IMG/VR virus record: IMGVR_UViG_3300009103_000001
Span: 146,158 to 210,157 of that record
Strand: one strand, 5' to 3'
Length of the DNA: 64,000 nt
Every line of letters begins with the position of its first letter. Positions within the stretch are counted from its first letter, which is position 1. Shown here piece by piece: positions 8,728 through 37,922 of the stretch. A program made the translations under genes and the position numbers. The notes beneath the pieces were generated by a model. The model searched no databases. It was given only the letters and a program-made list of their open reading frames with translations, and was not told where the DNA came from.

Positions 8728-10548
8728 TTAACCAATAATTTTATTAAATAACTCATTTGTTATATCTAATGTTTCATGTTCATCACCCATTACAGTATCG
8801 ATAATTTTCCTTTTCTTTTCTAAAACACTATAAATCATCTCATCTATAGTTCCAACAGCGATTGGGTAATACACATTAACGGTTTTATTAGTACCGATTC
8901 TCCAAGCTCTATCTTCTGCTTGAGCATGGTTTGATGGGACAAAATCTAAATCATTCATTATAACAATTTCAGCTTTAGTTAATGTTATTGCGGTACCAGC
9001 TGAAATTAAATTACCTATAAAAATTTTTATATCGTCATTTTCTTGGAATTGGTCTATTGACCTTTGTTTTTGTTTATCATTCATTTTACCGTTATGACCA
9101 ACAGCAATTTTTCCAAAGTGGTCTATTAAAGCGTCAAATGAATGTGTAAAAGTGGTAAATATTATAACTTTTTTTCCATTTTCTATAGCTTGTTCAGCTA
9201 GTTCAATACTTTGTTTTGTTTTTTCTAAAGCCAAATATTTTCTTAAAACAACTAATTCAACCATATGCCTACCAGCTCCTAAATTTTTACCCTCACTTTT
9301 AGCCCACTCTAAATACTCATTAAAAACATTATTATATTCTTTCATATCATCAATTTCCATATAATATGGTGCAACAATTTTTGGGGGTAAGTCTAAATGG
9401 TCTTCTTTCTTTCTTCTTAATATTAATGATTTCGTTCTTTCATGTAACTCTTCTAGATTAGAAGCCCCATCAGTAATCCAAATATCTTTATAAAAACCAT
9501 TTTTGGTTTTTTTACGAAACTTTTTAGCGGCACAATACCTAAAAGCATAATATTTCCAACTATTAGTTATTGGAGATTCACATAAATATAGTAAATTATA
9601 AAAATCCATTGGTCTATTGGCTATTGGCGTTCCTGTTAATAACCATTTTCTTTCAATAACCTTACTTAATTGATTAATTACTTTAGTTCGTTGTGATTTT
9701 GGGTTTTTAGCCATATGACACTCATCTACTATCATTAACTCAAAACCTTCATTAGCTAAGTGACGATTTATCTCATGGTCCTTATATTTTTTTCTACCAT
9801 CCACAAGAGTGTGAAAATTTTTTAAAATATCATAATTGATTATAGTAAATTTTTTAGGGTTCCAATGTCCGGTTTTAATTATTGAAATATCCTCTTCTGG
9901 TACAAAATTAGATATTTCTCTAAACCAATTAATTTTAGCGTTAGCAGGACAAATAACTAATATTTTATCTACACCACATTCTAATGCGGCTATTATTGAC
10001 ATATAGGTTTTACCTAACCCCATATCATCACCCAAGATACATTTATTTTTACTTAATAAAAACTTTACACCTTTTTCTTGGTGTTTAAAAGCTTTCCACC
10101 CTCTTTTATCTATTTTAGTGTATTTTTCGAAATCAACATTAACATTAACATCTTTTTCATATAAATTTTCAAAAACTTGTGTTTTTGGTACATAAAACAT
10201 TGGTGAGTATTTTTGGTTTTTAAATACTTTACCTTTAACGTGGTAACTTTTTTCTGTATCACCTAAAACTACCTCAACTAATATTTTTTCTGGAATATGA
10301 TTTAAATCAAATTTTTCTTGTAGTTGTTTACCTAAAAACTCAGTAATACCAACCACTCTGTTTAAATTAAAAGGTTCTTTATTGAAATTATTATTTATAT
10401 ATTCTGATAAACTAGGGGTTATTGGGAATGGCCCCTTTTTTTCTAATTTTTCTTTTAATGATAAAATATATTCATTATTTCCATTATATTTTTCTAATTT
10501 AAATAATGTTTTTCTATTTTTTAATTTATTAATATCTAACATAATCAA
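8728..10548 (-). CDS. SNF2-family helicase/translocase
   Basis: GDDMGLGKT (Walker A), VDECH, LTGTP and QAEDRAWRIG motifs. Confidence 0.92.
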   Translation of the reverse strand: MIMLDINKLKNRKTLFKLEKYNGNNEYILSLKEKLEKKGPFPITPSLSEYINNNFNKEPFNLNRVVGITEFLGKQLQEKFDLNHIPEKILVEVVLGDTEKSYHVKGKVFKNQKYSPMFYVPKTQVFENLYEKDVNVNVDFEKYTKIDKRGWKAFKHQEKGVKFLLSKNKCILGDDMGLGKTYMSIIAALECGVDKILVICPANAKINWFREISNFVPEEDISIIKTGHWNPKKFTIINYDILKNFHTLVDGRKKYKDHEINRHLANEGFELMIVDECHMAKNPKSQRTKVINQLSKVIERKWLLTGTPIANRPMDFYNLLYLCESPITNSWKYYAFRYCAAKKFRKKTKNGFYKDIWITDGASNLEELHERTKSLILRRKKEDHLDLPPKIVAPYYMEIDDMKEYNNVFNEYLEWAKSEGKNLGAGRHMVELVVLRKYLALEKTKQSIELAEQAIENGKKVIIFTTFTHSFDALIDHFGKIAVGHNGKMNDKQKQRSIDQFQENDDIKIFIGNLISAGTAITLTKAEIVIMNDLDFVPSNHAQAEDRAWRIGTNKTVNVYYPIAVGTIDEMIYSVLEKKRKIIDTVMGDEHETLDITNELFNKIIG

Positions 10549-10598
10549 TTAAATATAAAAACAAATGAAATAAAATAAACTAAATAGGGAATAACTAA

Positions 10599-10606
10599 AT
10601 ATTTAT
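10599..10606 (+). promoter_or_regulatory. Putative phage late-promoter motif ATATTTAT
   Basis: Same motif at 24290, 26767, 34509, 37386, 39072, 43375, 46425, 49278 and 53764 (+), and at 3051 and 7504 (-), each 5-50 nt upstream of a start codon. Confidence 0.55.
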
Positions 10607-10620
10607 AAAAAAAAAGAATT

Positions 10621-11136
10621 ATGCCTAATAAAAAAAAGTGGCCAATAACTCGTGTAAGTAAATTTTATGATAAAACAGATTTTAGTCTAGAAAATGATAT
10701 GGCTAGAGAATTTGTTGAGGGTGACCTTAATTTTATTGTGGTTTTGTTTAAGGTTGATAGAATTAAAAGTCAAACCGATGATACATATGGTGAAGCTGAT
10801 GCTGAAGAAATACAATTTCACCCACCATTAGAGATTAAAGTTAGACCAGTATTAAACCCATCTGAACAAAAATCATATTCAGAAGGTTATGGTAGATATG
10901 AAGATTATGGTAATTTAGTTTTTACTGTATTTGTAGACCAATTAAAAGAATTAGATACCGATATAGATTATGGTGATTATATTGGTTATCCAGATTTTGA
11001 AGATAATATAAAATATTTTACAGTTGTTAATGATGGTAAAATATACTCAGATAATGAACATACAAGATTAGGGTATGAGGGGTATTATAGAACAATAACT
11101 TGTGTTACAGCAGATGAAGATGAATTTAATGGTTAA
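10621..11136 (+). CDS. Probable neck/head-tail connector protein (T4 gp14-like)
   Basis: First gene of the structural block; D..YGE motif and size fit neck proteins. Assignment is from memory of the family. Confidence 0.45.
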   Translation: MPNKKKWPITRVSKFYDKTDFSLENDMAREFVEGDLNFIVVLFKVDRIKSQTDDTYGEADAEEIQFHPPLEIKVRPVLNPSEQKSYSEGYGRYEDYGNLVFTVFVDQLKELDTDIDYGDYIGYPDFEDNIKYFTVVNDGKIYSDNEHTRLGYEGYYRTITCVTADEDEFNG

Positions 11137-11138
11137 TT

Positions 11139-12176
11139 ATGGCTTTACCTAAAAAAAGAAAAAAAAATATAGATATAAAAGTTGTTGACCCTAACAGTGG
11201 TCCAGAAAAATGGGTAAGTCAGTTTTTAGAAAAAAATAAACAATTTTTACCTAGGTCAGTAGATTTTGCTGATTTAGATGGTGGGTTTATTGATTTTGTA
11301 AATAATGATTTAGGTATAGTATTAAAGGGAAAAAGAGTACCAACACACTTTTTAACACTACAGAGATGGAATGAATTCGCTAAAATTTGGCCACACACAG
11401 ACAAGTATAAAAACATGAAAATACCATTTATTTCTATTGTTAGAAGACCTAATCCGGAAACAGGTACTAACCCTGCCGACTTTAAAATACCGATAAGAAA
11501 AAATTTCCCTTATATGCAAATACCTGTTTGGGACGGTAACCGTAAGGGGGCGGATATATACGGTATACCAAACCCAGTAGGGGTGGATATGTTCTATACT
11601 GTTAGATTTTTTTGTTATAGAATGCGTGAATTAAATAAATTAAGCCAAAAAGTCTTACAAACATTTGCGTCAGCACAAGCATATATTAACATAAAAGGAC
11701 ATTATTTCCCTATTATGTTAGAATCTATTGGAGATGAAAGTCAAATAGACGATTTAGAGGGTAAAAGATTTTATGTACAAACATATGAGATGAAGTTAAT
11801 GGGTTATATTGTAGATGAGGAAGAATTTGAAGTTAAACCAGCTGTTAGTAGAATTTTTGTCACACAAGAAGTGGATGATAAAAAACCAAAACCAATTGTT
11901 AACTTTATGAATGATGAAGATAATGATAAATCATTAAAATGTATAATACAATTTTTACCAAATGCTCCAACACAAATTAAATTTAAAGCAGACAATAAAA
12001 CTAATTTTTCTAGTATTGAGGTAGATAATATAACTACTTATGATATATATAAAAATGGTGTGTTAGTAACTGTACCTTTCACTGTAGAAGATACTGACCT
12101 TATAACTATTAATATTGTTAAAACAGATTCAACTAAAATTAGTGAAATAATACTTAGAGGATTAATTATAGTATAA
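11139..12176 (+). CDS. Probable tail terminator / sheath completion protein (T4 gp15-like)
   Basis: Follows the neck-like gene; YTVRFF...ELNKL..KVLQTF...FPIMLESI pattern. Confidence 0.45.
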   Translation: MALPKKRKKNIDIKVVDPNSGPEKWVSQFLEKNKQFLPRSVDFADLDGGFIDFVNNDLGIVLKGKRVPTHFLTLQRWNEFAKIWPHTDKYKNMKIPFISIVRRPNPETGTNPADFKIPIRKNFPYMQIPVWDGNRKGADIYGIPNPVGVDMFYTVRFFCYRMRELNKLSQKVLQTFASAQAYINIKGHYFPIMLESIGDESQIDDLEGKRFYVQTYEMKLMGYIVDEEEFEVKPAVSRIFVTQEVDDKKPKPIVNFMNDEDNDKSLKCIIQFLPNAPTQIKFKADNKTNFSSIEVDNITTYDIYKNGVLVTVPFTVEDTDLITINIVKTDSTKISEIILRGLIIV

Positions 12177-26821: not shown

Positions 26822-29800
26822 ATGGCGAACGAATTTGTAATAAAGAACGGTTTTATCTCCAAGGGAGATTCTATAGTTAATGGAACCATTTCTGGTGAAA
26901 CATTAAATCTTACAACAATACCGACAAACGATAATTCTCAAACACAAGTATTAGTTAGAAATAATACCACAGGTGTGGTAGAATATAGAGACGCATCATC
27001 ATTAAGTGGTGGGTCAGGGACAAATACATTTGTAACAGGAACAACTTTCGCTAGCAATCAATTTGTTACCACAAGAAATGATGGTGTAGATGTATTAAAA
27101 TTTAGTGGTGGGTCAAACGTAACTTTATCCAACCCATCTTCAAACCAAATTAAAATAGATGTTTCTTTACCACCATCTATGAATACGTATGTAACTGGTT
27201 TTACATACAACGATAATAACACATTTACAATATTTGATAACGTTGGTGGGGTATTCCCAGCAACAATTAATCAAGTAAGTGGTTTAACGGTTAATGGTGA
27301 TATTACAGTAACAGGTATATCTAATTTAAATACTGTAACCGCCACCACAATTGATTTTGATTTAAATTATACTGGTGCAACGGCAGAAGGTAGATTGTCT
27401 TGGAACGGAGATGATGGGACACTTGATTTAGGAATGGGTGGTGGAAATGTAACCCAACAAATTGGTCAAGAAATATATTATAAAATTAAAAATCAAAGTG
27501 GGGCAACAATATCTAATGGTAGGGTTATTAGAAATGCGGGTTCGCTTGGTGCATCAGGAAGAATATTAGGTGAGTATATGATTGCGGATGGTACATATCC
27601 TTTCGCAAAAACTTTAGGTATTGCAACAGAAGATATCGCAAATGGTGACGAAGGTTTTGTTACTGAATTTGGTGTTGTTAGAGGAATTGACACCACAGGT
27701 TCTATTTATGGTGAATCTTGGTCAGATGGTGATGTATTATATGTGTCTCCAACCATTGCTGGTGGATTAACAATCGTTGAACCAACCGCACCGAATCAAG
27801 TTTTAGAAATGGGCGTTGTATTAAATTCGGCTATTAATGGTTCTATATTTGTAGATAGACATCTTTCTACTAAGTTAGGTGATATTAGTGATGTAGAAAC
27901 CACAGGTTGTACAAATGGTGATTTAATTGTTTATAACTCCGCAACCACTGTTTGGGAATATAGTAAAGTATTAAATGGTGATTATGATATTAACGGGACA
28001 TTGTCTGCAACAACATATTATGGTGATGGTTCTAATTTAACTGGAATATCTACACAAATAGATACTGGAAATGTTCTTTGGGTTGATAATATATTTGGAA
28101 ACGATGGTACTGCATTAGTAGATAGACAAGATAGACCTTGGGCTAGTATCGCCACCGCTATTAGTAATGCATCTACAAATGATACTATATTAGTTAGACC
28201 AGGTGATTATGTTGAATCATCGTTTACGTTAAACCCAGCGACATCATTAGTAAGTCAAGGTGGGGCTAAAGTAACATCTATCAGTGCGTCAACTACTACA
28301 GGTAATTTTATTACTATTTCAGGTTCTTCTTATATGGAAGGATTTACAGTTTATACCCCCACAGATGATTCCGCAGCATTATATATGAACGACTCAACCG
28401 CTGGTATTGTAACCACTTTAAATGATGTACATTTTAAAGGTTCAAGTACAGTATCACCACCTTTAGGTAAGGGTGTTGTTATGGATACGGGATTAGCTGG
28501 TAATGGTAAAATTATATATAGAGAACTTAGATATGGTGGTGGTAATTTAAATATATTAGCTGAAGTTAATAAAGGTATTTTTGCATTAGATGGTATGCAT
28601 GTACCAGGTGGAGGAACAGTTAATAAAGCCATCCAAATGAATGGTGGTAGAGGTCAATTAATTAATGTTAATGTTGGTAACCCCTCTTGCGATACTGCAT
28701 TAAGTGTTAGTGGTACATCTTCAAACAAACCAGTTGTTGCGGGATTTGGTTTTAACATATTTAATGTTCCAATAGGGATAGAAATAACATCAGATGACTA
28801 TGATGTTGAGGTTCAACAAGGTAGATTAGATGCTGGAACTACAAACGTATTAGTGTCAAGTGGTGTTACAGGGTCAAATGGTAAATTAAATCTAACCTCA
28901 TTTTCAATGGATTCAACAAAGTTGTCTATTCCGTATGGTTGGGTTGATTCACCACACACATTTCAATTTTCAGATATTGGTAATTCACAAAATATTGAAC
29001 CTATTTTAAGAAGTTGGTCAAACTTTGAGGTTGGTCATGCAAATAAGGGGTTTGAAACCAATCTTGGTCGTGGTTCTGAATATCAGAATGGGTTACATGT
29101 TCATAGTAGTGGAACAACAGGTACAACACACCTTTCAATGTCTGCCAAAACAGAGGGTGTTACTTGGTCTTTTGAGTCATTAACCGCTGGAGAACAACTT
29201 TATATTGGTAGTGAAGAAAAATATTCTAATGGTGAATTTGTTAGATTTAACGGTTTTGAGGTTGGTTATACTGGTTCGACTGGTGGGACATATACAATAG
29301 AATATTATTCTGGTGGTACTTGGGTAGATGTAAAATATCAAGTAGTACACCATAATTTAGGTTATAATTACGCAAATACATTGTTTTCTAGGTCGGTTGA
29401 TTCTTTGGAGGATATTAGGATTGGTATAGATGAGAATAGTGGTTGGGAAAGTACAACACTTTTTGGTCATGAGGCAAAATGGATTAGAATTACAATGGTT
29501 ACACCTCCAGCATCCTTACCCCAATTTGATTTATTGTGGTTGGAACCATCACATACAGAAGTTAATGATAATGGTATATTAAATTTTTACGGTAATGCTC
29601 TATATAGGGACACATTAGTTTCTGCTGGTAATATATTTGGTTTAGATGGTGCGGTTACAGATGCATCAATAACGGTTGGTTCTACGGTAACTTGGGACCA
29701 TATTATGGAAAACTCACAATTTAATACTTCGGGTATGATGGGCACTCAACCAGGTGATGCAATAATGTTACAAAGTATTCTACCTAAAGGTACTTGCACA

Positions 29801-30211
29801 GCATACCCTTTAAGAGTAATTATACATTATATTTTAACAGGTAGTGGCCCATTAACTACTTTACCAGAAATAACTTTATCCGTTGTTGGGAAAGAGACTT
29901 ATAATAATTTTAACGCAGACCCAGCAGGTGGATTGGCACCAACAAGGAGAACTTTAACAAATACAAATGATTTAACTACTGGTGGTGAGGAAGTAAATAT
30001 AGAATTAGGAGAACTAGCTGATTTTTCATCAGAATATCTTTCTGTTACTGAAGAATATGATTTTGACATATCTTCATTATATGAAAGTGATGGGGTATTT
30101 ATAAGAATAGAATTTTTTGATGAGGGTGTACCCTCACAAACAATAACATTTCCCGCAATTGAAGCTTCAATTGTTAAATGGGCATTGGGTGATAGAATAA
30201 GAGTAGAATAA
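26822..30211 (+). CDS. Tail fibre/spike protein, paralog of the 12176-17122 protein
   Basis: Shares PTNDNS.TQ...EY, TFVTGTTFASNQ, SATTYYGDGSNLTGIST and the beta-helix entry motif (LWVDNIFGND...RPWASI...VRPGDY). Confidence 0.75.
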   Translation: MANEFVIKNGFISKGDSIVNGTISGETLNLTTIPTNDNSQTQVLVRNNTTGVVEYRDASSLSGGSGTNTFVTGTTFASNQFVTTRNDGVDVLKFSGGSNVTLSNPSSNQIKIDVSLPPSMNTYVTGFTYNDNNTFTIFDNVGGVFPATINQVSGLTVNGDITVTGISNLNTVTATTIDFDLNYTGATAEGRLSWNGDDGTLDLGMGGGNVTQQIGQEIYYKIKNQSGATISNGRVIRNAGSLGASGRILGEYMIADGTYPFAKTLGIATEDIANGDEGFVTEFGVVRGIDTTGSIYGESWSDGDVLYVSPTIAGGLTIVEPTAPNQVLEMGVVLNSAINGSIFVDRHLSTKLGDISDVETTGCTNGDLIVYNSATTVWEYSKVLNGDYDINGTLSATTYYGDGSNLTGISTQIDTGNVLWVDNIFGNDGTALVDRQDRPWASIATAISNASTNDTILVRPGDYVESSFTLNPATSLVSQGGAKVTSISASTTTGNFITISGSSYMEGFTVYTPTDDSAALYMNDSTAGIVTTLNDVHFKGSSTVSPPLGKGVVMDTGLAGNGKIIYRELRYGGGNLNILAEVNKGIFALDGMHVPGGGTVNKAIQMNGGRGQLINVNVGNPSCDTALSVSGTSSNKPVVAGFGFNIFNVPIGIEITSDDYDVEVQQGRLDAGTTNVLVSSGVTGSNGKLNLTSFSMDSTKLSIPYGWVDSPHTFQFSDIGNSQNIEPILRSWSNFEVGHANKGFETNLGRGSEYQNGLHVHSSGTTGTTHLSMSAKTEGVTWSFESLTAGEQLYIGSEEKYSNGEFVRFNGFEVGYTGSTGGTYTIEYYSGGTWVDVKYQVVHHNLGYNYANTLFSRSVDSLEDIRIGIDENSGWESTTLFGHEAKWIRITMVTPPASLPQFDLLWLEPSHTEVNDNGILNFYGNALYRDTLVSAGNIFGLDGAVTDASITVGSTVTWDHIMENSQFNTSGMMGTQPGDAIMLQSILPKGTCTAYPLRVIIHYILTGSGPLTTLPEITLSVVGKETYNNFNADPAGGLAPTRRTLTNTNDLTTGGEEVNIELGELADFSSEYLSVTEEYDFDISSLYESDGVFIRIEFFDEGVPSQTITFPAIEASIVKWALGDRIRVE

Positions 30212-30221
30212 ATATATTAAA

Positions 30222-31478
30222 ATGGCAACTACAAATCAATTATTATACACACAAGAGTTTACAGGAACAACATTTACTGTAACACATAATTTAGATAGAT
30301 TAAATTTAGATTATAGAGTTGTTTGTAGTGGTAGTAGTAGACCAGATTTAGTACAATCTATAGAATTTTCGACTGGAAATGAAAGAAATAGTTTTGATGT
30401 TTATTTAACTTCATCTAATGTTGGTGTATTACAAGTATTGGATACTACTAGATATCCAATTAATTTACCTTCACCTGAAAGAATTAATGTAGGTTCTCAA
30501 ATAGGGTTCATTAGTGGAACAACTCTTAATGGTGATATATTAGAATTAAATAGAACTGGTGGTCATCCAGCACTTACAACAGATTTATCTACAATTGATA
30601 CCGATAGATATGTGACTGGTGCAACATTAAATTCAACAACTTTAGAAATAGGAAGAAATGGTGGACTTTCAGCTGTAACGGCAGATTTATCAAGTATAGA
30701 TGGAACTGTTAAGCGGGTTGATGGTGTGGGGACAGTTAATGGGTTAACATTGACTGGTACTATAACTGATAATGGTGATTTAACTTTAGGTGGTACACTA
30801 GCTATAAATGATGGTGATTGGTCTGGAACTGATTTATCTATTACAAATGGTGGTACAGGACAAAGTAACGCACAAGATGCGATAAACGCATTAACTCAAG
30901 TTAGTAGTGCGACAAATGAACATGTATTAACAAAAGACACCTCCACAGGTAATGCGACATGGAAAGCTGGTGGTGGTGGAACAGATAAATTTGTTAGTGG
31001 TGGTACTTTTAATACGGGAACAACTAGTATAGATTTAGTTGGTAACTCTTCAGACACAACATTTAGTGTTGATATGGGAATCATACAACATGATAGACAA
31101 GTCGCTGACATACCTACATGGAGCCCTAGTGGTCCATCGTCATATACTGACATTACTGATGCTACTCTCGACACAGGTAATTTAGGCACAAATGGTGATT
31201 ATATTATAATATTTAACGCTAACTGGCAAGGTAGTGCTAAAAATGAAGAAGCTGATTTTCAGATACTTGTTGGTGGTTCTGTGGTATCAATTAGTGAAAG
31301 GGGTCATTCTAATCATAAAGCTGGTGAAGATTACACAATATCTTCATCTATTATGGTTGAAAATGTTGCTAGTGGTACAACAATTAAAGTACAAGGTAAG
31401 ATAAGTGGTGGTAATTTAACAGTGCAAAGGGGTACATTAATAATTGACGGAATAAGAACAACAAACAATATATCATAA
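30222..31478 (+). CDS. Fibre-like structural protein
   Basis: G/T-rich; contains GGTGQSNAQDAINAL and D.(F/Y)V(S/T)G.T repeats shared with the neighbouring fibres. Confidence 0.6.
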   Translation: MATTNQLLYTQEFTGTTFTVTHNLDRLNLDYRVVCSGSSRPDLVQSIEFSTGNERNSFDVYLTSSNVGVLQVLDTTRYPINLPSPERINVGSQIGFISGTTLNGDILELNRTGGHPALTTDLSTIDTDRYVTGATLNSTTLEIGRNGGLSAVTADLSSIDGTVKRVDGVGTVNGLTLTGTITDNGDLTLGGTLAINDGDWSGTDLSITNGGTGQSNAQDAINALTQVSSATNEHVLTKDTSTGNATWKAGGGGTDKFVSGGTFNTGTTSIDLVGNSSDTTFSVDMGIIQHDRQVADIPTWSPSGPSSYTDITDATLDTGNLGTNGDYIIIFNANWQGSAKNEEADFQILVGGSVVSISERGHSNHKAGEDYTISSSIMVENVASGTTIKVQGKISGGNLTVQRGTLIIDGIRTTNNIS

Positions 31479-31479
31479 T

Positions 31480-32214
31480 ATGAATTATAATTTATTTGCA
31501 TATAATATTAGTGGACAAACAGTAGGGGTAGATATAAATTCTTGGTGGCCCGAAGAATTAAATGGTAACGAACCATTTGTTTTAGTTAGTGGTCAAACAT
31601 TTAATGGGTATGATAATATAACCTCAATTGAGGATATGTATAATTGGGGGTCTAACCCTTGCGGTAGTTATCAAACTTGGCAAAAAGGTGTTAGATTATG
31701 TGGTTATGAAACTGGTTGGACAGCAATGACAGATACAGAAAAGGATATTATTATAGATATGTATGCATATCCAGAAGGTTCAACGGAAATAGTAACTTAT
31801 TTGGTAATAACAAAAGGGATGACAGTTAATGAAGCAGAAGATTATTTAATTGATAAGTGGCACATCTATTGGAATAGTTTCTTGGAAGATTGTCCAGAAA
31901 GATGGAGTAATGCGGCTAAGGTTACTGTAGGTTATTTACCATTTAGTGCATCATCACAATTATTAGATACAGTAAATGTACTGGTTGACAAATATATTGT
32001 TGCTGGAAGATTGGGGATTGGTTATGGTGATACAAGTGATGGGTTAATGAATTTCATTATGTCATCAAGTGGTTACGTTGGAAATGGATTAGAAGAATAT
32101 TGTACTTCACAAGGGTTTACACTAAAGAAAGGTGATTATGATAATTTTAGATTGGATTTACAAAATACTATAATTGACCCTTATTTTTGGCCTGAGATAG
32201 AACAATATATTTAA
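31480..32214 (+). CDS. Hypothetical protein (possible fibre-associated)
   Basis: 244-aa ORF 1 nt after the previous stop. Confidence 0.7.
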   Translation: MNYNLFAYNISGQTVGVDINSWWPEELNGNEPFVLVSGQTFNGYDNITSIEDMYNWGSNPCGSYQTWQKGVRLCGYETGWTAMTDTEKDIIIDMYAYPEGSTEIVTYLVITKGMTVNEAEDYLIDKWHIYWNSFLEDCPERWSNAAKVTVGYLPFSASSQLLDTVNVLVDKYIVAGRLGIGYGDTSDGLMNFIMSSSGYVGNGLEEYCTSQGFTLKKGDYDNFRLDLQNTIIDPYFWPEIEQYI

Positions 32215-32261
32215 CCTTTATTTTTACTTTAAACTTACTATTTTAATATAAAATTTAAGTT

Positions 32262-32672
32262 TTGGATAGAGTTTTATTTAAATCTAATAAAATAGGTATT
32301 AAAAAATCACCCATACATGGTTGGGGTGTATTTGCATTGGAAGATATTGAAATTGGTGATTTGATTGAGGAATGTCTCTATGTTCCAATAGAAACCTATA
32401 ATGAGGGTGATGTGATAATACATTATTCATTTCCCTATCCAAGAATTTTTGGTGAGATTAAAGATAGTAATAAAAAAATAGATAAAATAATTCAAGTAAT
32501 AGTATTAGGGTATGGTTCATTATATAATCATTCTCTAACACCAAATATTGATTATGTAACTAATACTGAATTAGGTGTGTTTGAATTTATATCGTTTAAA
32601 AAAATAAAAAAAGGAGAAGAATTATTTATAAAATATCATAATAATCCAGATTTTATAAAAGAGAAAAAATAA
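32262..32672 (+). CDS. SET-domain protein (lysine methyltransferase)
   Basis: SPIHGWGVFA, YNHS..PN and IKKGEELFIKY motifs; TTG start. Confidence 0.88.
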   Translation: MDRVLFKSNKIGIKKSPIHGWGVFALEDIEIGDLIEECLYVPIETYNEGDVIIHYSFPYPRIFGEIKDSNKKIDKIIQVIVLGYGSLYNHSLTPNIDYVTNTELGVFEFISFKKIKKGEELFIKYHNNPDFIKEKK

Positions 32673-33322
32673 TGGAAGCAACATTTAAAATAAACATGGT
32701 GGATATTTGTGACATCCAATTAGGTGACCATTTTAATACATTAGTAAACAAATATTCTAATATTGCACAAACTTTAAATCCTGATAAATTTAATAAAGAA
32801 GAATTAGATTTAAACTTTCCTTATATAGAATCTAAACAACGTAAGTATTATGGTTTAGTAGAAACACTATGGAATAGTGGGTTATTAAAAGATAATATGA
32901 AAATTATAGATTTAGGTTGTGGTTTATGTACAACATTATATAATTTAAATTTACAATTTAAAAATTATAATATACCATCTAGTTTTTATGGTGTAGAATA
33001 TAATGAAGAGTTATTAAAAATATTTACCAAATATTTAAGTCCTCTTTGGGAAAATAATTTCCCTAAATTTGCTTTAGGCGATATTATGGACTGTGATTTG
33101 TCACAATACGATTTAATATTATCATATCAACCATTTAAAGATTTAGAATTATTAGAAAAAATGTATAATAAAGTTTTTAGTGAAATGAAATCTGGTTCTG
33201 TTTTTCACGAACACAATTATAAAGATAGAGAAGAAACTTTACTAAGAAGTGTCAATAATAACATTGAACCGAAAATATCTTTATTTGGTGGTGAAAAACA
33301 ACCTTTATTTATAAAAAAATGA
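32672..33322 (+). CDS. Class I SAM-dependent methyltransferase
   Basis: IDLGCG, YGVEYN, GDIMD and YDLILSY motifs. Confidence 0.8.
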   Translation: MEATFKINMVDICDIQLGDHFNTLVNKYSNIAQTLNPDKFNKEELDLNFPYIESKQRKYYGLVETLWNSGLLKDNMKIIDLGCGLCTTLYNLNLQFKNYNIPSSFYGVEYNEELLKIFTKYLSPLWENNFPKFALGDIMDCDLSQYDLILSYQPFKDLELLEKMYNKVFSEMKSGSVFHEHNYKDREETLLRSVNNNIEPKISLFGGEKQPLFIKK

Positions 33323-34266
33323 AAGCATTAGTAGTTTCAGGTGGTGGTAGCAAGGGCGCCTTTGGTGGTGGTGTTGCACAATACCTAATAGAAAAAGAAA
33401 AAAAAGAATACGATTTATTAATAGGGACTTCCACTGGTAGTTTACTTGTACCATTTATTGCCATAAAAAAAATGGATACATTAAAAGAGGCATACACAAC
33501 TGTTACCCAAAAAGATATTTTTAATGTTAACCCATTTAAAGTTAAAAGTGATGCAAATGGTGTAGTTAAAGTGGGGATTAATTTTAAAAATGTTTTATGG
33601 AATATATTGGTTAGGAGGAAGAAGTCATTTGGTGATGCAGATAATCTTAAAAAATTGATAAGGAGATTTATGAGTGAAAAAGATTATAGAAAAATAAAAG
33701 ATTCGGGTAGAGAAGTAATTTGTACCACCACAAACCTAACATTAGGTAAACCAGAATATAAATCAACAAAAGAATATGGGTATAAGGATTTTTGTGATTG
33801 GACATTAGCTTCAGCAACAGTACCACCATTTATGAGTGTGGTAGAAAAGGATGGTTATGAATATGCGGATGGAGCAATATTGGAACATGCTGCGATACAA
33901 GAAGCGATAAATAGAGGGGCGAAAGAAATAGATGTTATTATTCTTAGAAAGGAAGAAACTGAATTACCCCCAGAATTAATTAGAAATGCTTTTCACTATA
34001 TATTTAGAACAATAGATTTAATGATGTTGGAGATAGGTAGGTCTGATGTTCAGATTGGTAAATTAAAATCTAAAAAAAATGATGTTAAATTAAATTTTTA
34101 TTATACACCAAGAAAACTTACCAACAATTCTTTGATATTTAATAAAGAGAACATGTCGAGTTGGTGGGAAGAAGGTTATATGTCCGCAAGAAAGAGATTT
34201 TGTAAGTCATATAATTTATGTGGCAAGAAAAAGGCTAAGTTAACATATGATGGTACAATAGATTAA
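33319..34266 (+). CDS. Patatin-like phospholipase
   Basis: GGGSKG, GTSTG (catalytic Ser) and DGA (catalytic Asp). Confidence 0.92.
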   Translation: MKALVVSGGGSKGAFGGGVAQYLIEKEKKEYDLLIGTSTGSLLVPFIAIKKMDTLKEAYTTVTQKDIFNVNPFKVKSDANGVVKVGINFKNVLWNILVRRKKSFGDADNLKKLIRRFMSEKDYRKIKDSGREVICTTTNLTLGKPEYKSTKEYGYKDFCDWTLASATVPPFMSVVEKDGYEYADGAILEHAAIQEAINRGAKEIDVIILRKEETELPPELIRNAFHYIFRTIDLMMLEIGRSDVQIGKLKSKKNDVKLNFYYTPRKLTNNSLIFNKENMSSWWEEGYMSARKRFCKSYNLCGKKKAKLTYDGTID

Positions 34267-34415
34267 TATTCACCATAAATATCTTTCTTAGGGGTACATT
34301 TTTCTCTTATTAACTTCTCAACAAAGGAGAACATTTTAAGGCCGTTTTTTTCACAATAGTCTTTTAATAATTTATGTGAATGAGGTGTTATTTTTAGGTT
34401 TTTAGTTCTTTTCAT
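34263..34415 (-). CDS. 50-aa ribbon-helix-helix-like DNA-binding protein (not in ORF track)
   Basis: MKRTKNLKITPHSHKLLKDYCEKNGLKMFSFVEKLIREKCTPKKDIYGEY: strand, helix, Gly turn, helix. Stop interlocks (TTAA) with the patatin stop. Confidence 0.7.
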   Translation of the reverse strand: MKRTKNLKITPHSHKLLKDYCEKNGLKMFSFVEKLIREKCTPKKDIYGEY

Positions 34416-34459
34416 TAGCTTTTCTTTATAAGTATGACAAAAGTAAGACTTTTATCTCA

Positions 34460-34489
34460 TTTATTTTGTGGTATATACCACAAAATAAA
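34460..34489. promoter_or_regulatory. Perfect 30-bp palindrome TTTATTTTGTGGTAT-ATACCACAAAATAAA
   Basis: Checked base by base. Lies between the divergent RHH gene and the tail sheath gene; operator or hairpin role is inferred. Confidence 0.75.
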
Positions 34490-34553
34490 ATTTTTGGGTT
34501 TTTAAGTAATATTTATATAAAAAATAACTTAGAAACAAAAAAATAAAAATTAA

Positions 34554-37337
34554 ATGCCTGATAATAAGATATTCGTATCACCTGGTGTATTTACATCTGA
34601 AAAAGATTTAAGTTTTGTAGCCCAACAAGTTGGTGTTACCACATTAGGTGTGGCTGGAGAAACTGTAAAAGGACCAGCTTTTGAACCCATATTTATAACA
34701 AACTATGATGAATACACAACAATATTTGGTGGATTAAATCCAGCTAAATTTAGTGATAACAAACCAAAGTATGAAACATCGTATATAGCAAAAAGTTATT
34801 TATCACAATCAAATCAACTTTTTATTACAAGAATTTTAGGTCTTACTGGTTATGACGCTGGTTCGGCTTGGATGATTACAACGGACGCTAATTACGACCC
34901 AGATACAATAGTTACTGGTACTACATCAGCGTTTAGGGCTGATTTTAGTGGTGGAACAACATATTTTAATTTTACCGATACTTTTGGTCCAGGTGGAGCT
35001 GTTGACGCGATGTGGTTATATAGTTTAGGTTTATTCCCTAATGGACCAACCTTAACAACAGAAGCCGTACCTGGTATTACCACAACATACCCAGAAGGTA
35101 TTGTTTTCACAAAAACAGCACCAACAACATTTAGTGGTACTTCAGCGATAGTTACATTATTAAGTGGTTCTAGTTTAAGTGGTACTATAACTGGTACAAC
35201 TACAGATTATACAGCGACAGCATACACAGAATATGAAGGTATTGTATTAGCTATGTTAAGGTCAAGAGGTAGTGTTTCTAGTGATGTGTTATCATACGAT
35301 ACTTTACAAACAAGTGGTGGTGTTGAAATAAATATTAATGGAGCATCTACTGACCCAGAAGCTGATTTTGAATTATCCGCAACAACATCTAGTAGTGTTG
35401 TTAAATATGATGTGTCTTTAGATACTACAGCAAGAAATTATATAACTAGAGTATTGGGTACGGATTGTTTTGATAAAGACGCTTTAATATTTGTAGAAGA
35501 ACAATACCCAAATTTATTGGCAGATTTAATATCCAATAACTATATTTTAGGGTTAAATGGTACTTTAGCTTTTACAACTGATTTTGACAACTATCAACAA
35601 CAATGGCAAACACCTGAAACACCATGGGTTGTTTCTGAACTACGTGGTAATGTTGTAGATAAATTATTTAAATTTATAACAATATCGGATGGTAATTCAG
35701 CAAATAAAGAAATTAAAATTTCTATTCAAAACATTAAACCAGATACTAAACAATTTGATGTTGTTGTTAGAGAATTTTATGATACAGATTCTAGACCTTC
35801 AATTGTTGAAAGGTTTGCTAAATGTGTTATGGACCCAACTGATGACAATTATGTAGCTAGAAGAATAGGTACAGCAGATGGTGAATTTAGTTTAAGAAGT
35901 CAATATATAATGGCGGTTATGAATGAGGACGCACCAATAGACGCTTTCCCAGCAGGATTTGAAGGTTACATTGTTAGAGATTATGACGCTGGTGTTTTAC
36001 CACCTAGTTTAGTTTATAAAAACACTTATGACCCAACAAATGAAAGAATTAAAAAGGTTTATTTAGGACTTTCTAATACTGTAGGTATAGACCAAAATAT
36101 GTTTAACTGGAAAGGTTATACTAATGACAGTACACCAAATCAATGGACGGCAACAACTAGTGGTTTCCATATGGATAGTGGGGCAACTATAGCCGGTGAT
36201 TTTGTTGTTGGGTGTTGTCCTTTTAGAACTACAGCTGGAATTGAAGGTACTAATTATGAATCTATTTTCTCTAGAAAATTTACTTTCGCACCTTACTTAG
36301 GGTTTGATGGTTGGAATTGTTATAGACAATCAAGAACAAATACTGATAGGTATAAGGTTGGTAAAGCAGGGTTTACAGCAGGTTTAGCTTCAACTGAATT
36401 TACACAGTATGGTTCTGATTTAGGTAATTCAGATTATTACGCTTACTTAGAGGGTATAGAAACTTATCAAAATCCAGAAGCGGTTAATATAAACGTATTA
36501 GCAACACCTGGTATAGATTACTCAGAAAATGAAGACCTTGTAGCATTAACAATCGATATGGTGGAAGAAGATAGAGCTGATTCAGTGTATATTTTGACAT
36601 CACCAGAAGGTGTAACTTATGATAATAGTGCTCAACTAACTGGTATAGGGTTTACTACAGCAGATGTTCTAGCACCAGAAGATATTGTTGACTTATTAGA
36701 TGTGGCAGATATTGATTCTAATTATACAGCAACATATTGGCCTTGGATTCAAGAAAGAGATACAGAAAATAGTTTAAATGTTTGGTTACCACCAACATTA
36801 GAAGTTGTTAGAAATATAGCTTTAACAGATAACGTATCTTTCCCTTGGTTCGCTTCAGCTGGTTATACAAGAGGTCTTACAGAAGCTCTTCAAGCTAGAC
36901 TTAAACTTACTGAGGAAATGAGAGATACATTATATGAAGGAAGAATTAACCCAATGGCAACATTCTCAGACCAAGGGGTTGTGATTTGGGGTAATAAAAA
37001 CCTACAAATTAAAGATTCTTCTTTAGATAGACTTAACATTAGAAGATTGTTATTACAAACAAGAAAATTAATTTCAGCAGTAGCTGTTAGATTATTGTTC
37101 GAACAAAATGACCAAATAGTTAGAAATCAATTCCAAAACTTGGTTAACCCAATATTGGAAAATATTAAAAGAGAAAGAGGTTTAGCTGATTTTAGAATTC
37201 AACTATCTGATGACCCAGAAGAAATTGATAGAAATGAGTTAAGAGGTAAAATATTCTTAAAACCAGTACCTTCATTAGAATTTATTATATTAGAGTTTAA
37301 TGTAACTTCTACTGGGGCTTCTTTTGATGATGTATAA
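34554..37337 (+). CDS. Contractile tail sheath protein
   Basis: FVSPGVFTSEKDLS N-terminus; YWPWI, WFASAGYTRG, INPMATF, VIWGNKNL and LNIRRLLL. Confidence 0.95.
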   Translation: MPDNKIFVSPGVFTSEKDLSFVAQQVGVTTLGVAGETVKGPAFEPIFITNYDEYTTIFGGLNPAKFSDNKPKYETSYIAKSYLSQSNQLFITRILGLTGYDAGSAWMITTDANYDPDTIVTGTTSAFRADFSGGTTYFNFTDTFGPGGAVDAMWLYSLGLFPNGPTLTTEAVPGITTTYPEGIVFTKTAPTTFSGTSAIVTLLSGSSLSGTITGTTTDYTATAYTEYEGIVLAMLRSRGSVSSDVLSYDTLQTSGGVEININGASTDPEADFELSATTSSSVVKYDVSLDTTARNYITRVLGTDCFDKDALIFVEEQYPNLLADLISNNYILGLNGTLAFTTDFDNYQQQWQTPETPWVVSELRGNVVDKLFKFITISDGNSANKEIKISIQNIKPDTKQFDVVVREFYDTDSRPSIVERFAKCVMDPTDDNYVARRIGTADGEFSLRSQYIMAVMNEDAPIDAFPAGFEGYIVRDYDAGVLPPSLVYKNTYDPTNERIKKVYLGLSNTVGIDQNMFNWKGYTNDSTPNQWTATTSGFHMDSGATIAGDFVVGCCPFRTTAGIEGTNYESIFSRKFTFAPYLGFDGWNCYRQSRTNTDRYKVGKAGFTAGLASTEFTQYGSDLGNSDYYAYLEGIETYQNPEAVNINVLATPGIDYSENEDLVALTIDMVEEDRADSVYILTSPEGVTYDNSAQLTGIGFTTADVLAPEDIVDLLDVADIDSNYTATYWPWIQERDTENSLNVWLPPTLEVVRNIALTDNVSFPWFASAGYTRGLTEALQARLKLTEEMRDTLYEGRINPMATFSDQGVVIWGNKNLQIKDSSLDRLNIRRLLLQTRKLISAVAVRLLFEQNDQIVRNQFQNLVNPILENIKRERGLADFRIQLSDDPEEIDRNELRGKIFLKPVPSLEFIILEFNVTSTGASFDDV

Positions 37338-37409: not shown

Positions 37410-37922
37410 ATGTCAAAAATTATAAAAAAAGGTGAATTAGATTTAGTTATTGAATCAACACTAAAAGAAGTAAAATTAAATGTAGATAGTGGCATTGAAG
37501 TTGAGTTAGACTCAAACTTAGAAGTTAATGAGGCTAAAACATATAATACTTCAAAAAATAATTCTTCTACTAAAGTAGAGGCTAAAACATATAATACTTC
37601 AAAAAATAATTCCTCAAGTAAAACCGAATCTGAAGATGTTATTGGTACTGGTGATACTGGTGATTCTGATGAAGCTGGTGCACCTGAGTCTGAAAAGGGT
37701 GAAAAAGAGTTTGATAAAGATGAAGATAAAACAAATATCTCAGAAAAAGAAAATACTTGTGATGATTGTGGTAAGTCTAATGAAGATTGTGAATGTGAAA
37801 AAGAAGATATCGTTGAGGTATCAGTAAGTGATTTGGCAGAATCAGTTGTTAAAACAACACAAAACGACATATTAAAAGAAAGTCTTGAAAACTTTAATAA
37901 ACTAATAAATTATAGAAAATAA
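37410..37922 (+). CDS. Acidic low-complexity protein, probable internal head/core protein
   Basis: Leader ending TLKE; C-terminal ILKESLENFNKLINY; internal tandem duplication. Confidence 0.7.
   Translation: MSKIIKKGELDLVIESTLKEVKLNVDSGIEVELDSNLEVNEAKTYNTSKNNSSTKVEAKTYNTSKNNSSSKTESEDVIGTGDTGDSDEAGAPESEKGEKEFDKDEDKTNISEKENTCDDCGKSNEDCECEKEDIVEVSVSDLAESVVKTTQNDILKESLENFNKLINYRK
37530..37612 (+). repeat. 35-nt exact direct repeat with 48-nt period (EAKTYNTSKNNS x2)
   Basis: GAGGCTAAAACATATAATACTTCAAAAAATAATTC at 37530-37564 and 37578-37612. Confidence 0.95.

What the first reader, a model, noticed from the sequence alone, without database searches (positions are those of the whole stretch)
32262..34266. 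Coupled SET methyltransferase + class I methyltransferase + patatin operon between fibre and sheath genes
Seen: three overlapping genes (shared-base and ATGA overlaps) with intact catalytic motifs. Known: SET domains methylate protein lysines; patatins are phospholipases used as effectors in CBASS and secretion systems. Two methyltransferases plus a lipase in a phage is unusual. Inference: a virion- or host-protein methylation module, or a phage-borne effector/regulator (lysis, envelope remodelling, exclusion of competing phages).
Basis: partly seen in the sequence, partly recalled or inferred. Interest (0 to 1): 0.6.

Follow-up and report, generated by a model that had tools for sequence, protein, structure and literature searches.

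The report
Variable cargo slot in marine phage
The three enzyme genes are real and intact, but related phages carry them in every combination, so they are independent optional cargo in a variable slot next to the tail genes, not a three-part machine.

Summary
Three intact, overlapping plus-strand ORFs encode a 136-aa SET-domain protein, a 216-aa class I SAM methyltransferase (MT) and a 315-aa patatin-like hydrolase (PAT). They lie between the tail-fibre genes and the tail sheath of an uncultured marine jumbo myophage (210-kb IMG/VR fragment).

The "coupled module" interpretation does not hold. Close relatives carry SET+MT+PAT, SET+PAT, SET+MT, SET alone, MT alone or PAT alone. Homology breaks fall exactly at gene boundaries, one relative keeps a 134-nt patatin scar, and each gene has its own divergence.

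- SET is the most constant occupant of the slot. It is a minimal vSET-like lysine methyltransferase family found on about 290 viral contigs. In 11 of 30 sequence clusters it sits directly upstream of an SNF2 helicase, without MT or PAT.
- PAT is 46-49% identical to chromosomal patatins of Bacteroidota. It is not a CBASS effector.
- MT belongs to a small, apparently phage-restricted family; its substrate is unknown.

All three genes are under purifying selection. I read this as an accessory-gene hotspot at a module junction. The enzymes' targets remain inferred.

The parts
26822..31478 (+). Two tail-fibre-like genes (1129 aa and 418 aa) upstream of the slot
   Evidence: ORFs. Both are conserved but mosaic in relatives. 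No strong family hit; fibre-like composition and position.
31480..32214 (+). Conserved 244-aa ORF (orf244), the left boundary of the variable slot; function unknown
   Evidence: 71-84% identical in L003, L004, L011-L013 and L028. No Pfam, PHROG or NCBIfam hit. Atlas leads are below 0.8.
32262..32672 (+). Minimal SET-domain protein-lysine methyltransferase (136 aa, TTG start), the most constant occupant of the slot
   Evidence: PF00856 E 1e-12. Best solved relative is PBCV-1 vSET 1n3j, E 1.3e-12. GWG, NHS and Y125 are invariant in 19 phage homologues. dN/dS 0.08-0.13. About 290 viral contigs carry relatives.
32672..33322 (+). Optional cassette: class I SAM-dependent methyltransferase (216 aa), substrate unknown
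   Evidence: PF13847 at 38.2 bits. Only 32 relatives among 5.8 billion proteins, all metagenomic. AF2 model has a Rossmann core at pLDDT 75 with residues 1-54 unmodelled. Z plateau of 12.4-13.9 over many unrelated MTases. Absent from SET+PAT and SET-only relatives.
33319..34266 (+). Optional cassette: patatin-like acyl hydrolase (315 aa), Ser38/Asp184 dyad, no signal peptide
   Evidence: PF01734 at 86.5 bits. AF2 pLDDT 87. Foldseek matches CapV/CapE, PlpD and patatin at TM 0.56-0.61. 46-49% identical to chromosomal genes of Edaphocola, Saprospiraceae, Nonlabens and Cyclobacterium. Deletion scar in L014.
34263..34415 (-). Conserved Arc/RHH-like 50-aa gene, the right boundary of the slot; convergent with, and overlapping by 4 bases, whichever gene fills the slot
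   Evidence: phrog_582 and phrog_3180 Arc-like repressor at E 1e-3; PF10723 weak. 71-82% identical in all close relatives and 55-60% next to the sheath gene in the wider clade.
34460..34489 (.). Perfect 30-nt palindrome followed by a T-run, between the RHH gene and the sheath gene; likely terminator and/or operator
   Evidence: Terminator-like site. Relatives keep a hairpin at the same place with different stem sequences.
34554..37337 (+). Tail sheath (927 aa)
   Evidence: phrog_23 E 2e-53; PF04984 and PF17482.

Best explanation
The three genes occupy a recombination-prone accessory-gene slot. It lies at the 3' end of the tail-fibre operon, bounded on the left by a conserved 244-aa ORF and on the right by a conserved antisense RHH gene and the sheath gene. 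The phage belongs to a clade of uncultured marine large myophages that probably infect Bacteroidota.

The genes are packed tightly and are probably co-transcribed, with translational coupling suggested by the overlaps. They act independently of each other.

(1) SET is a long-standing gene of this phage lineage. It is a minimal vSET-like SAM-dependent protein-lysine methyltransferase. Its target is unknown. I infer a DNA-associated or virion protein.

(2) PAT is a host-derived cytoplasmic patatin-like serine hydrolase. I infer that it cleaves host membrane glycerophospholipids late in infection, either as a non-essential aid to lysis or to release fatty acids.

(3) MT is a phage-restricted class I methyltransferase cassette of unknown substrate.

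Shown: gene identities, intact motifs, purifying selection, independent presence and absence, exact cassette boundaries, and the relatives of PAT in Bacteroidota. Inferred: transcription, substrates and physiological roles.
For: - Domain and motif evidence.
- All subsets of the trio occur in relatives whose flanks are 80-90% identical.
- Homology breakpoints fall at 32668/32670, 33313-33335 and 34262, which are the gene boundaries.
- L014 keeps a 134-nt 5' remnant of PAT fused to the RHH gene end, and L003 lacks the 5' two-thirds of SET.
- Contigs from independent cold-seep, brine and other metagenomes join 32214 to 33319 (no SET, no MT; 248+806 nt) and 32635 to 33313 (no MT).
- Divergence differs by gene within the same genome pair. 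Window vs L012: dS is 0.46 for SET, 0.78 for MT and 1.6 for PAT.
- GC drops to 27% at 32-34 kb against 31-35% in the flanks.
- SET relatives are on about 290 viral contigs. In 11 of 30 clusters SET directly precedes an SNF2 helicase, and MT or PAT is near SET only in the window clade.
- PAT has more than 6000 relatives. Its nearest cellular ones are chromosomal Bacteroidota genes in non-conserved, housekeeping-type contexts.
- The MT family has only 32 members, all metagenomic.
Against: - No expression data exist: no RNA run holds the locus.
- The overlaps TAATG and ATGA would fit co-regulated partners.
- Two relatives (window, L012) keep all three genes, so a facultative interaction when all are present cannot be excluded.
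- Several relatives are short contigs cut at one boundary (L005-L007), so their state is partly unknown.
- The substrates of all three enzymes are unknown.
- The host assignment rests on PAT similarity and the lack of Shine-Dalgarno sequences.
Confidence: 0.8

Rival explanations
1. SET, MT and PAT form one functional module. For example, the methyltransferases modify or license the lipase, or all three act on one virion or host target.
For: Tight packing with 1-base and 4-base overlaps on the same strand. The full trio is kept in two genomes, the window and L012.
Against: Every subset occurs in close relatives and in independent metagenomes. Each gene stays under purifying selection where the others are absent. 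Across 30 SET clusters, MT and PAT are near SET only in this one clade. PAT's cellular homologues stand alone.
Confidence: 0.06
2. The patatin is a defence-type effector carried by the phage: a CapV/CapE-like lipase activated by a signal. It would kill the cell to exclude competing phages, or act as a timed lysis trigger.
For: The closest solved folds are the CBASS effectors CapV and CapE (TM 0.57-0.61). PADLOC phospholipase effector models hit at E 3e-12. The gene sits in a variable accessory slot.
Against: NCBIfam CBASS_lipase scores 46 bits against a cut-off of 200. No SMODS cyclase is found in the 210-kb record or next to PAT in any relative. The nearest relatives by far (46-49% identity) are stand-alone chromosomal Bacteroidota patatins in housekeeping-type neighbourhoods.
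Confidence: 0.1
3. SET is a virion-linked enzyme. It would methylate lysines of tail-fibre or other structural proteins (for example for protease resistance or adhesion), or be packaged and injected like chlorovirus vSET.
For: In the window clade SET is the last conserved gene of the fibre operon. In three other phage lineages a SET gene directly follows fibre-like genes: L017 after a collagen-like fibre (phrog_5073, E 5e-129), L024 between a 1384-aa protein and the sheath, and L025.
Against: In the largest set of relatives (11 of 30 clusters) SET instead heads an operon with an SNF2 helicase, divergent from structural genes. In others it lies among glycosyltransferases. A natural variant lacks SET altogether. 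There are no proteomic data.
Confidence: 0.25
4. SET acts on a DNA-associated protein (host nucleoid protein, RNA polymerase or a phage DNA-binding protein), functionally linked to the SNF2 ATPase.
For: SET overlaps the start of an SNF2-family helicase gene by 4 bases in L059/L060, and is adjacent to SNF2 in 11 clusters whose SETs are only 41-100% identical to each other. By established knowledge, characterised viral, bacterial and archaeal SET proteins methylate histones or chromatin proteins (vSET: H3K27). vSET is the best solved match.
Against: In the window genome SNF2 (8728-10548, minus strand) is 22 kb from SET, so adjacency is not required. No substrate has been identified.
Confidence: 0.3

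Closest known systems
Chlorovirus PBCV-1 vSET (A612L; PDB 1n3j)
   Same: Virus-encoded minimal SET domain of about 120-136 aa without pre- or post-SET cysteine modules. Best solved-structure sequence match (E 1.3e-12). Shares the GxG, NHS and C-terminal Tyr motifs.
   Different: vSET methylates histone H3K27 of a eukaryotic host, whereas the host here is inferred to be a bacterium without histones. The window clade has a roughly 17-residue insert in the SET-I region. Dimerisation, packaging and substrate were not tested.
Patatin-based putative lytic cassette of Wolbachia phage WO, and the patatin 'AMG' of marine megaphage Mar_Mega_1
   Same: A phage-borne patatin-like phospholipase. In WO it also lies beside the tail module and is proposed to act in lysis (PMC9203015). 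Mar_Mega_1 is a marine megaphage in which the gene is reported as an auxiliary metabolic gene (PMC9723777).
   Different: There is no holin-like or ankyrin partner here; the neighbours are SET/MT and an RHH gene. The gene is optional among close relatives. Function is untested in all of these cases.
CBASS phospholipase effectors CapV / CapE
   Same: Closest solved folds (TM 0.57-0.61) with the same Ser-Asp dyad architecture and similar length.
   Different: 15-20% identity. Far below the NCBIfam equivalog cut-off (46 vs 200 bits). No cyclase partner. The nearest sequence relatives are housekeeping-type Bacteroidota patatins.
Hyperplastic / moron regions of T4-like and other large phages (established knowledge)
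   Same: A fixed position between conserved structural genes where unrelated small genes are inserted, swapped and deleted, with lower GC and mosaic divergence.
   Different: Cassettes abut or overlap without recognisable flanking repeats or promoter stem-loops. One occupant (SET) is nearly constant.
Bacterial and archaeal SET proteins (Chlamydia NUE, Legionella RomA, Methanosarcina SET; PMC3980110, PMC2904774)
   Same: Prokaryote-associated SET-domain lysine methyltransferases. PF00856 is found in 144 of 301 sampled Bacteroidota genomes.
   Different: Bacteroidota chromosomal SETs match only the C-terminal ~50 residues of the phage protein. The phage family is distinct, at 43-47% identity among phages.

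Membership tests
SET-domain protein-lysine methyltransferase (PF00856) | Profile match above the curated cut-off | tested here: met
   48.9 bits vs 22.4, covering 1-104 of 105 model positions.
SET-domain protein-lysine methyltransferase (PF00856) | SAM-binding GxG, the NHS motif and the catalytic Tyr of the ELxxxY motif | tested here: met
   G20-W-G22, N89-H90-S91 and Y125. G20, G22, N89, E120 and Y125 are invariant in 19 phage homologues.
SET-domain protein-lysine methyltransferase (PF00856) | Pseudoknot fold and lysine methyl transfer | not tested
   No model of SET was made, because both prediction jobs went to MT and PAT. Activity needs an assay.
vSET-like minimal viral SET | Stand-alone SET core without Cys-rich pre-/post-SET modules; histone H3K27 substrate | tested here: inconclusive
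   The architecture is met (136 aa, ends 11 residues after Y125). The substrate cannot be the same in a bacterial host (inference) and was not testable.
Class I (Rossmann) SAM-dependent methyltransferase | Motif I, acidic residue after strand 2, Asp of motif III, Rossmann fold | tested here: met
   D80-L-G-C-G84, E109 (E or D in relatives) and D137 invariant. PF13847 at 38.2 vs 27 bits. AF2 core Z 13.9 to solved MTases.
Any specific MTase subfamily (tRNA, DNA, lipid, protein, small molecule) | A clear best match to one subfamily by sequence or fold | tested here: not met
   NCBIfam gives nothing near its cut-offs. Foldseek TM is 0.44-0.54 and VIA Z 12.4-13.9 is flat across unrelated enzymes. 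The DOT1-named Atlas clusters are leads only.
Patatin-like phospholipase (PF01734) | Gly-rich oxyanion loop, GxSxG nucleophile elbow, DG[A/G] catalytic Asp, patatin fold | tested here: met
   G8-G-G-S-K-G13, G36-T-S38-T-G40 and D184-G185 are invariant in 30 homologues. 86.5 vs 27.7 bits. Model pLDDT 87, with matches to CapV, CapE, PlpD and patatin.
CBASS effector CapV | Equivalog-level profile score and an adjacent CD-NTase cyclase | tested here: not met
   46.4 bits vs a cut-off of 200. No SMODS hit in the record and none beside PAT in relatives.
Phage WO-type patatin lytic cassette | Patatin next to the tail module together with holin-like and ankyrin genes, in a phage lacking an endolysin | tested here: inconclusive
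   The position next to tail genes is met. No holin-like or ankyrin neighbour. Four endolysin Pfams were not found, but the record is only 64% complete.
Obligate three-gene functional module (SET+MT+PAT) | Conserved co-occurrence of the three genes in relatives | tested here: not met
   All subsets are observed. MT or PAT is near SET in 1 of 30 SET clusters.

The most novel reading that the evidence does not exclude
The small SET proteins are a previously undescribed, widely conserved family of bacteriophage-encoded protein-lysine methyltransferases. They are on about 290 viral contigs, and this genome carries two paralogues. In most lineages the gene is translationally coupled to an SNF2 ATPase. 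The family would then act as a 'writer plus remodeller' pair on host nucleoid or transcription proteins, or alternatively would methylate virion fibre proteins. Either case would be protein-lysine methylation as a phage takeover or virion-maturation strategy in bacteria.
Probability: 0.25. Interest if true: 0.7.

Novelty: new member of a known kind. Interest (0 to 1): 0.35.

Why it matters
For the finding as posed, the result is deflationary. The trio is a chance assembly of independent accessory genes in a phage hotspot, not a new multi-enzyme system.

Three things remain useful.

(1) The case shows, with exact boundaries, a deletion scar and coexisting haplotypes, how large marine phages shuffle cargo at a module junction.

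(2) A phage-specific minimal SET family emerges. It is conserved across a deep clade of uncultured large myophages and I found no paper on it in the searchable literature. Its target, if found, would show what protein-lysine methylation does in phage-bacterium conflicts.

(3) The patatin's nearest cellular relatives point to Bacteroidota as the likely host. Because the gene is naturally present or absent among otherwise similar phages, its role could be tested in lysis, lipid salvage or exclusion.

Tried and rejected
- **Close cultured relatives:** megablast of the locus against GenBank phages gave no match. The sheath protein finds nothing above 31% identity, so there is no cultured relative and no host record.
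- **MT in phage collections:** a single-sequence MT search in viral contigs and GenBank phages found nothing. Relatives appeared only through tblastn over loci fetched with the other genes, and in the word search.
- **MT subfamily:** the PDB sequence search, Foldseek, VIA-align, ESM Atlas features and Atlas fold search gave no specific subfamily. The resemblance of 'YQPF' to the (D/N)PP(Y/F) motif of amino-methyltransferases was considered. I dropped it because the first position is not conserved.
- **orf244:** no family and no Atlas lead.
- **Expression:** no RNA run holds the locus, so co-transcription could not be checked. The sigma-70-type promoter scan was not above the shuffled expectation (62 vs 64).
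- **Endolysins:** PF00959, PF01510, PF13539 and PF01464 were not found in the 64%-complete record. This gives no conclusion on lysis.
- **RHH gene as a patatin-specific antitoxin:** rejected, because it is present where PAT is absent and across the wider clade.
- **Conserved neighbours of PAT in Bacteroidota chromosomes:** none found.
- **Literature:** searches for SET-domain proteins in phages returned nothing relevant.
- **Not done:** Complex prediction was not used, because I do not claim that these proteins bind. The large representative search was not used, because family scans and the word search settled the identities.
- **Other:** one mis-specified genome search was corrected. No alternative genetic code was used. 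Read laying was given 4,021 letters.
Full report
**Source.** The window is bases 146158-210157 of a 210,157-bp linear IMG/VR virus record that CheckV rates 64% complete. It has about 31% GC. It carries a family B DNA polymerase, an SNF2 helicase, ClpP, T4-like baseplate and tube proteins and a 927-aa sheath. This is a fragment of a large T4-like myophage. It has no cultured relative. The locus has no megablast match in GenBank phages, and the sheath protein reaches at most 31% identity there, with an uncultured huge phage, a Microcystis phage and Flavobacterium phages on top. Near-identical DNA occurs in marine, cold-seep and brine metagenomes from several studies.

**Observation.** The junctions read TAATG and ATGA.
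- All three pass Pfam's curated cut-offs: SET 48.9 bits, Methyltransf_31 38.2, Patatin 86.5.
- The catalytic motifs are present and conserved in relatives. In SET they are G20-W-G22, N89-H90-S91 and Y125. In MT they are D80-x-G-C-G84, E109 and D137. In PAT they are G8-G-G-S-K-G13, G36-T-S38-T-G40 and D184-G-A.
- Pairwise dN/dS against relatives is 0.08-0.13 for SET, 0.06-0.18 for PAT and 0.25-0.43 for MT, so all three are functional genes.
- Upstream lie two fibre-like genes and a conserved 244-aa ORF. Downstream lies the sheath gene.
It overlaps the patatin stop codon by four bases.

**Test of coupling.** I fetched relatives from IMG/VR with the patatin and SET proteins, from metagenome assemblies and from public runs. 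I mapped all neighbourhood proteins onto them.

In phages whose SET, RHH gene and orf244 are 70-95% identical to the window's, the slot between orf244 and the RHH gene holds:
- SET+MT+PAT: window, L012.
- SET+PAT: L002, L004, L005.
- Truncated SET + PAT: L003, where the 5' two-thirds of SET is deleted.
- SET+MT: L009.
- SET alone: L010, L011, L013.
- SET, an unrelated 67-aa ORF and a 134-nt remnant of the patatin 5' end fused to the RHH gene end: L014.

Three further configurations come from other contigs:
- On a 245.9-kb contig, MT alone follows orf244 and unrelated genes come next (L028).
- On a 129-kb contig and in L008, PAT alone precedes the sheath gene (L030, L008).
- Contigs from a brine and a cold-seep metagenome join 32214 to 33319, that is orf244 directly to PAT with neither SET nor MT. 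The brine contig has 248 and 806 nt on either side of the joint. Another contig joins 32635 to 33313, which is SET to PAT.
- Weaker joints (sides of 20-30 nt) suggest an empty slot. I do not rely on them.

DNA homology to the window stops at 32668, restarts at 32670, stops at 33320-33324, restarts at 33313-33335 and ends at 34262. Those are the gene boundaries.

Divergence differs by gene within the same genome pair. For window versus L012, dS is 0.46 for SET, 0.78 for MT and 1.6 for PAT. Local GC drops to 27%.

This is the signature of a cargo hotspot with cassette gain, loss and exchange.

**SET.**
- The best solved relative is chlorovirus PBCV-1 vSET (E 1.3e-12).
- The word search finds 332 relatives. 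A profile scan of IMG/VR finds 290 contigs.
- Relatives at 43-47% identity belong to a deep clade of related large myophages. Their polymerase, sheath, RHH gene and the two genes g171 and g345 are 37-60% identical to the window's.
- I clustered the SETs of the best 80 loci at 80% identity, which gave 30 clusters. In 11 of them SET lies immediately upstream of an SNF2-family helicase, with a 4-base overlap in L059/L060. That pair is divergent from g171/g345, with the RHH and sheath genes beyond.
- Others lie among glycosyltransferases or directly after fibre genes: L017, L024 and L025.
- Only the window's cluster has MT or PAT nearby.
- In the window genome the SNF2 gene (8728-10548, minus strand) abuts g171/g345 without SET. 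SET lies about 22 kb further on, at the end of an inserted baseplate/fibre block.
- The record also holds a second SET paralogue, 134 aa and 35% identical, outside the window.
- SET domains are common in Bacteroidota (144 of 301 sampled genomes). Those proteins match only the C-terminal ~50 residues of the phage protein, so the phage family is distinct.
- I found no paper on SET proteins in bacteriophages in the searchable library. PHROGs holds only an unannotated family.
- The target is unknown. Adjacency to SNF2 in most lineages favours a DNA-associated protein, while the position after fibre genes in four lineages favours a virion protein. Neither is shown.

**Patatin.**
- The AlphaFold model is confident (pLDDT 87).
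- Its closest solved folds are the CBASS lipases CapV and CapE (TM 0.57-0.61), followed by PlpD and potato patatin.
- It is not a CBASS effector. It scores 46 bits against an NCBIfam cut-off of 200. No SMODS cyclase is in the record, and none is next to it in any relative.
- By sequence it belongs to a family of more than 6000 proteins. The nearest cellular members are 46-49% identical over the full length. They are chromosomal genes of Edaphocola, Saprospiraceae, Nonlabens and Cyclobacterium, found in varied, housekeeping-type neighbourhoods and without signal peptides.
- I infer a host-derived gene and a Bacteroidota host. The A-rich, Shine-Dalgarno-free regions before the start codons fit that.
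- Phage-borne patatins are already on record. In phage WO one is a putative lytic enzyme beside the tail module (PMC9203015). In a marine megaphage one is reported as an auxiliary metabolic gene (PMC9723777).
- Because close relatives do without it, it cannot be essential. I favour an accessory late function on host membrane phospholipids, either as an aid to lysis or for fatty-acid release. That is inference.

**Class I methyltransferase.**
- The family has only 32 members among 5.8 billion proteins, all from metagenomes. The nearest Atlas cluster is 100% viral.
- The model shows a standard Rossmann core, with an unmodelled but conserved N-terminal 54 residues.
- Structural matches form a flat plateau across unrelated methyltransferases.
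- The substrate stays open.

**Verdict.** The genes and motifs are confirmed. The coupled-operon reading is not supported. The locus is an accessory-gene slot at the fibre/sheath junction, holding one lineage-wide SET gene and two optional cassettes. As a system it is ordinary for large phages. The phage SET family is the part that deserves experimental follow-up.

Noticed in passing
window 34263-34415 (minus strand): A conserved 50-aa Arc/RHH-like gene lies between the trio and the sheath gene. It is convergent with, and overlaps by 4 bases, whichever gene fills the slot. It also sits next to the sheath gene in the wider phage clade (55-60% identity), so it is probably a regulator of the sheath/late region and not a partner of the patatin.
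   Followed up: partly
window 34416-34553, especially 34460-34489: A perfect 30-nt palindrome followed by a T-run lies in the RHH-sheath intergenic region. Relatives keep a hairpin at the same position with different stem sequences (compensatory changes). They also share a GTATGA(C/A)AAAA repeat and an ATATTTAT box further on. The region is a candidate terminator, operator and late promoter.
   Followed up: partly
G000:C1:65191-65595 (L138:1450-1854), outside the window: A second intact SET-domain gene (134 aa, 35% identical to the window's SET; GFG, NHS and Tyr motifs kept) lies in the same phage record, among acidic proteins of unknown function.
   Followed up: partly
L059/L060 8001-10153, and 11 clusters of related loci (L070-L135): In most related phages the SET gene overlaps the start of an SNF2-family helicase gene by 4 bases. 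This arrangement is kept while the SETs diverge to about 41% identity.
   Followed up: partly
L014 513-875: This SET-only relative carries an unrelated 67-aa ORF in the slot plus a 134-nt remnant of the patatin 5' end fused to the RHH gene end. It is a deletion scar showing that the patatin was lost there.
   Followed up: yes
L003 5811-5948: Here the SET gene lacks its 5' two-thirds (the equivalent of window 32283-32530 is missing) while the patatin is intact. So SET, too, is dispensable in nature.
   Followed up: yes
L028 6678-11136 (245.9-kb contig): In the MT-only relative the genes after the slot differ completely. They include a DruA-like protein (PF14236, a Druantia defence component family) and a DnaJ homologue, and the sheath gene does not follow.
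   Followed up: no
L140 (G000:C1:131237-134533), outside the window: A cluster of three or four methyltransferase-like and glycosyltransferase-like genes, unrelated to the window's MT (BLASTP E 0.16), suggests a glycan or small-molecule modification pathway in the same phage.
   Followed up: no
L004 7097-7372 (also L003, L005): The RHH-sheath intergenic region of these relatives is about 130 nt longer and holds three tandem copies of a roughly 22-nt unit (GGGGTAAATTTGATTTTATA-like) that the window lacks.
   Followed up: no
window 8728-12176: SNF2 helicase (minus strand) lies divergent from g171 and g345 (plus strand), as in the related clade. In the window, however, about 22 kb of baseplate/fibre genes plus the slot lie between g345 and the RHH gene, so a large block has been inserted or rearranged relative to the relatives.
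   Followed up: partly
window 37410-37922: This 170-aa acidic, serine-rich ORF contains an internal direct repeat (KTYNTSKNNSS occurs twice). A mirror-image antisense ORF of the same length overlaps it. It was not examined.
   Followed up: no
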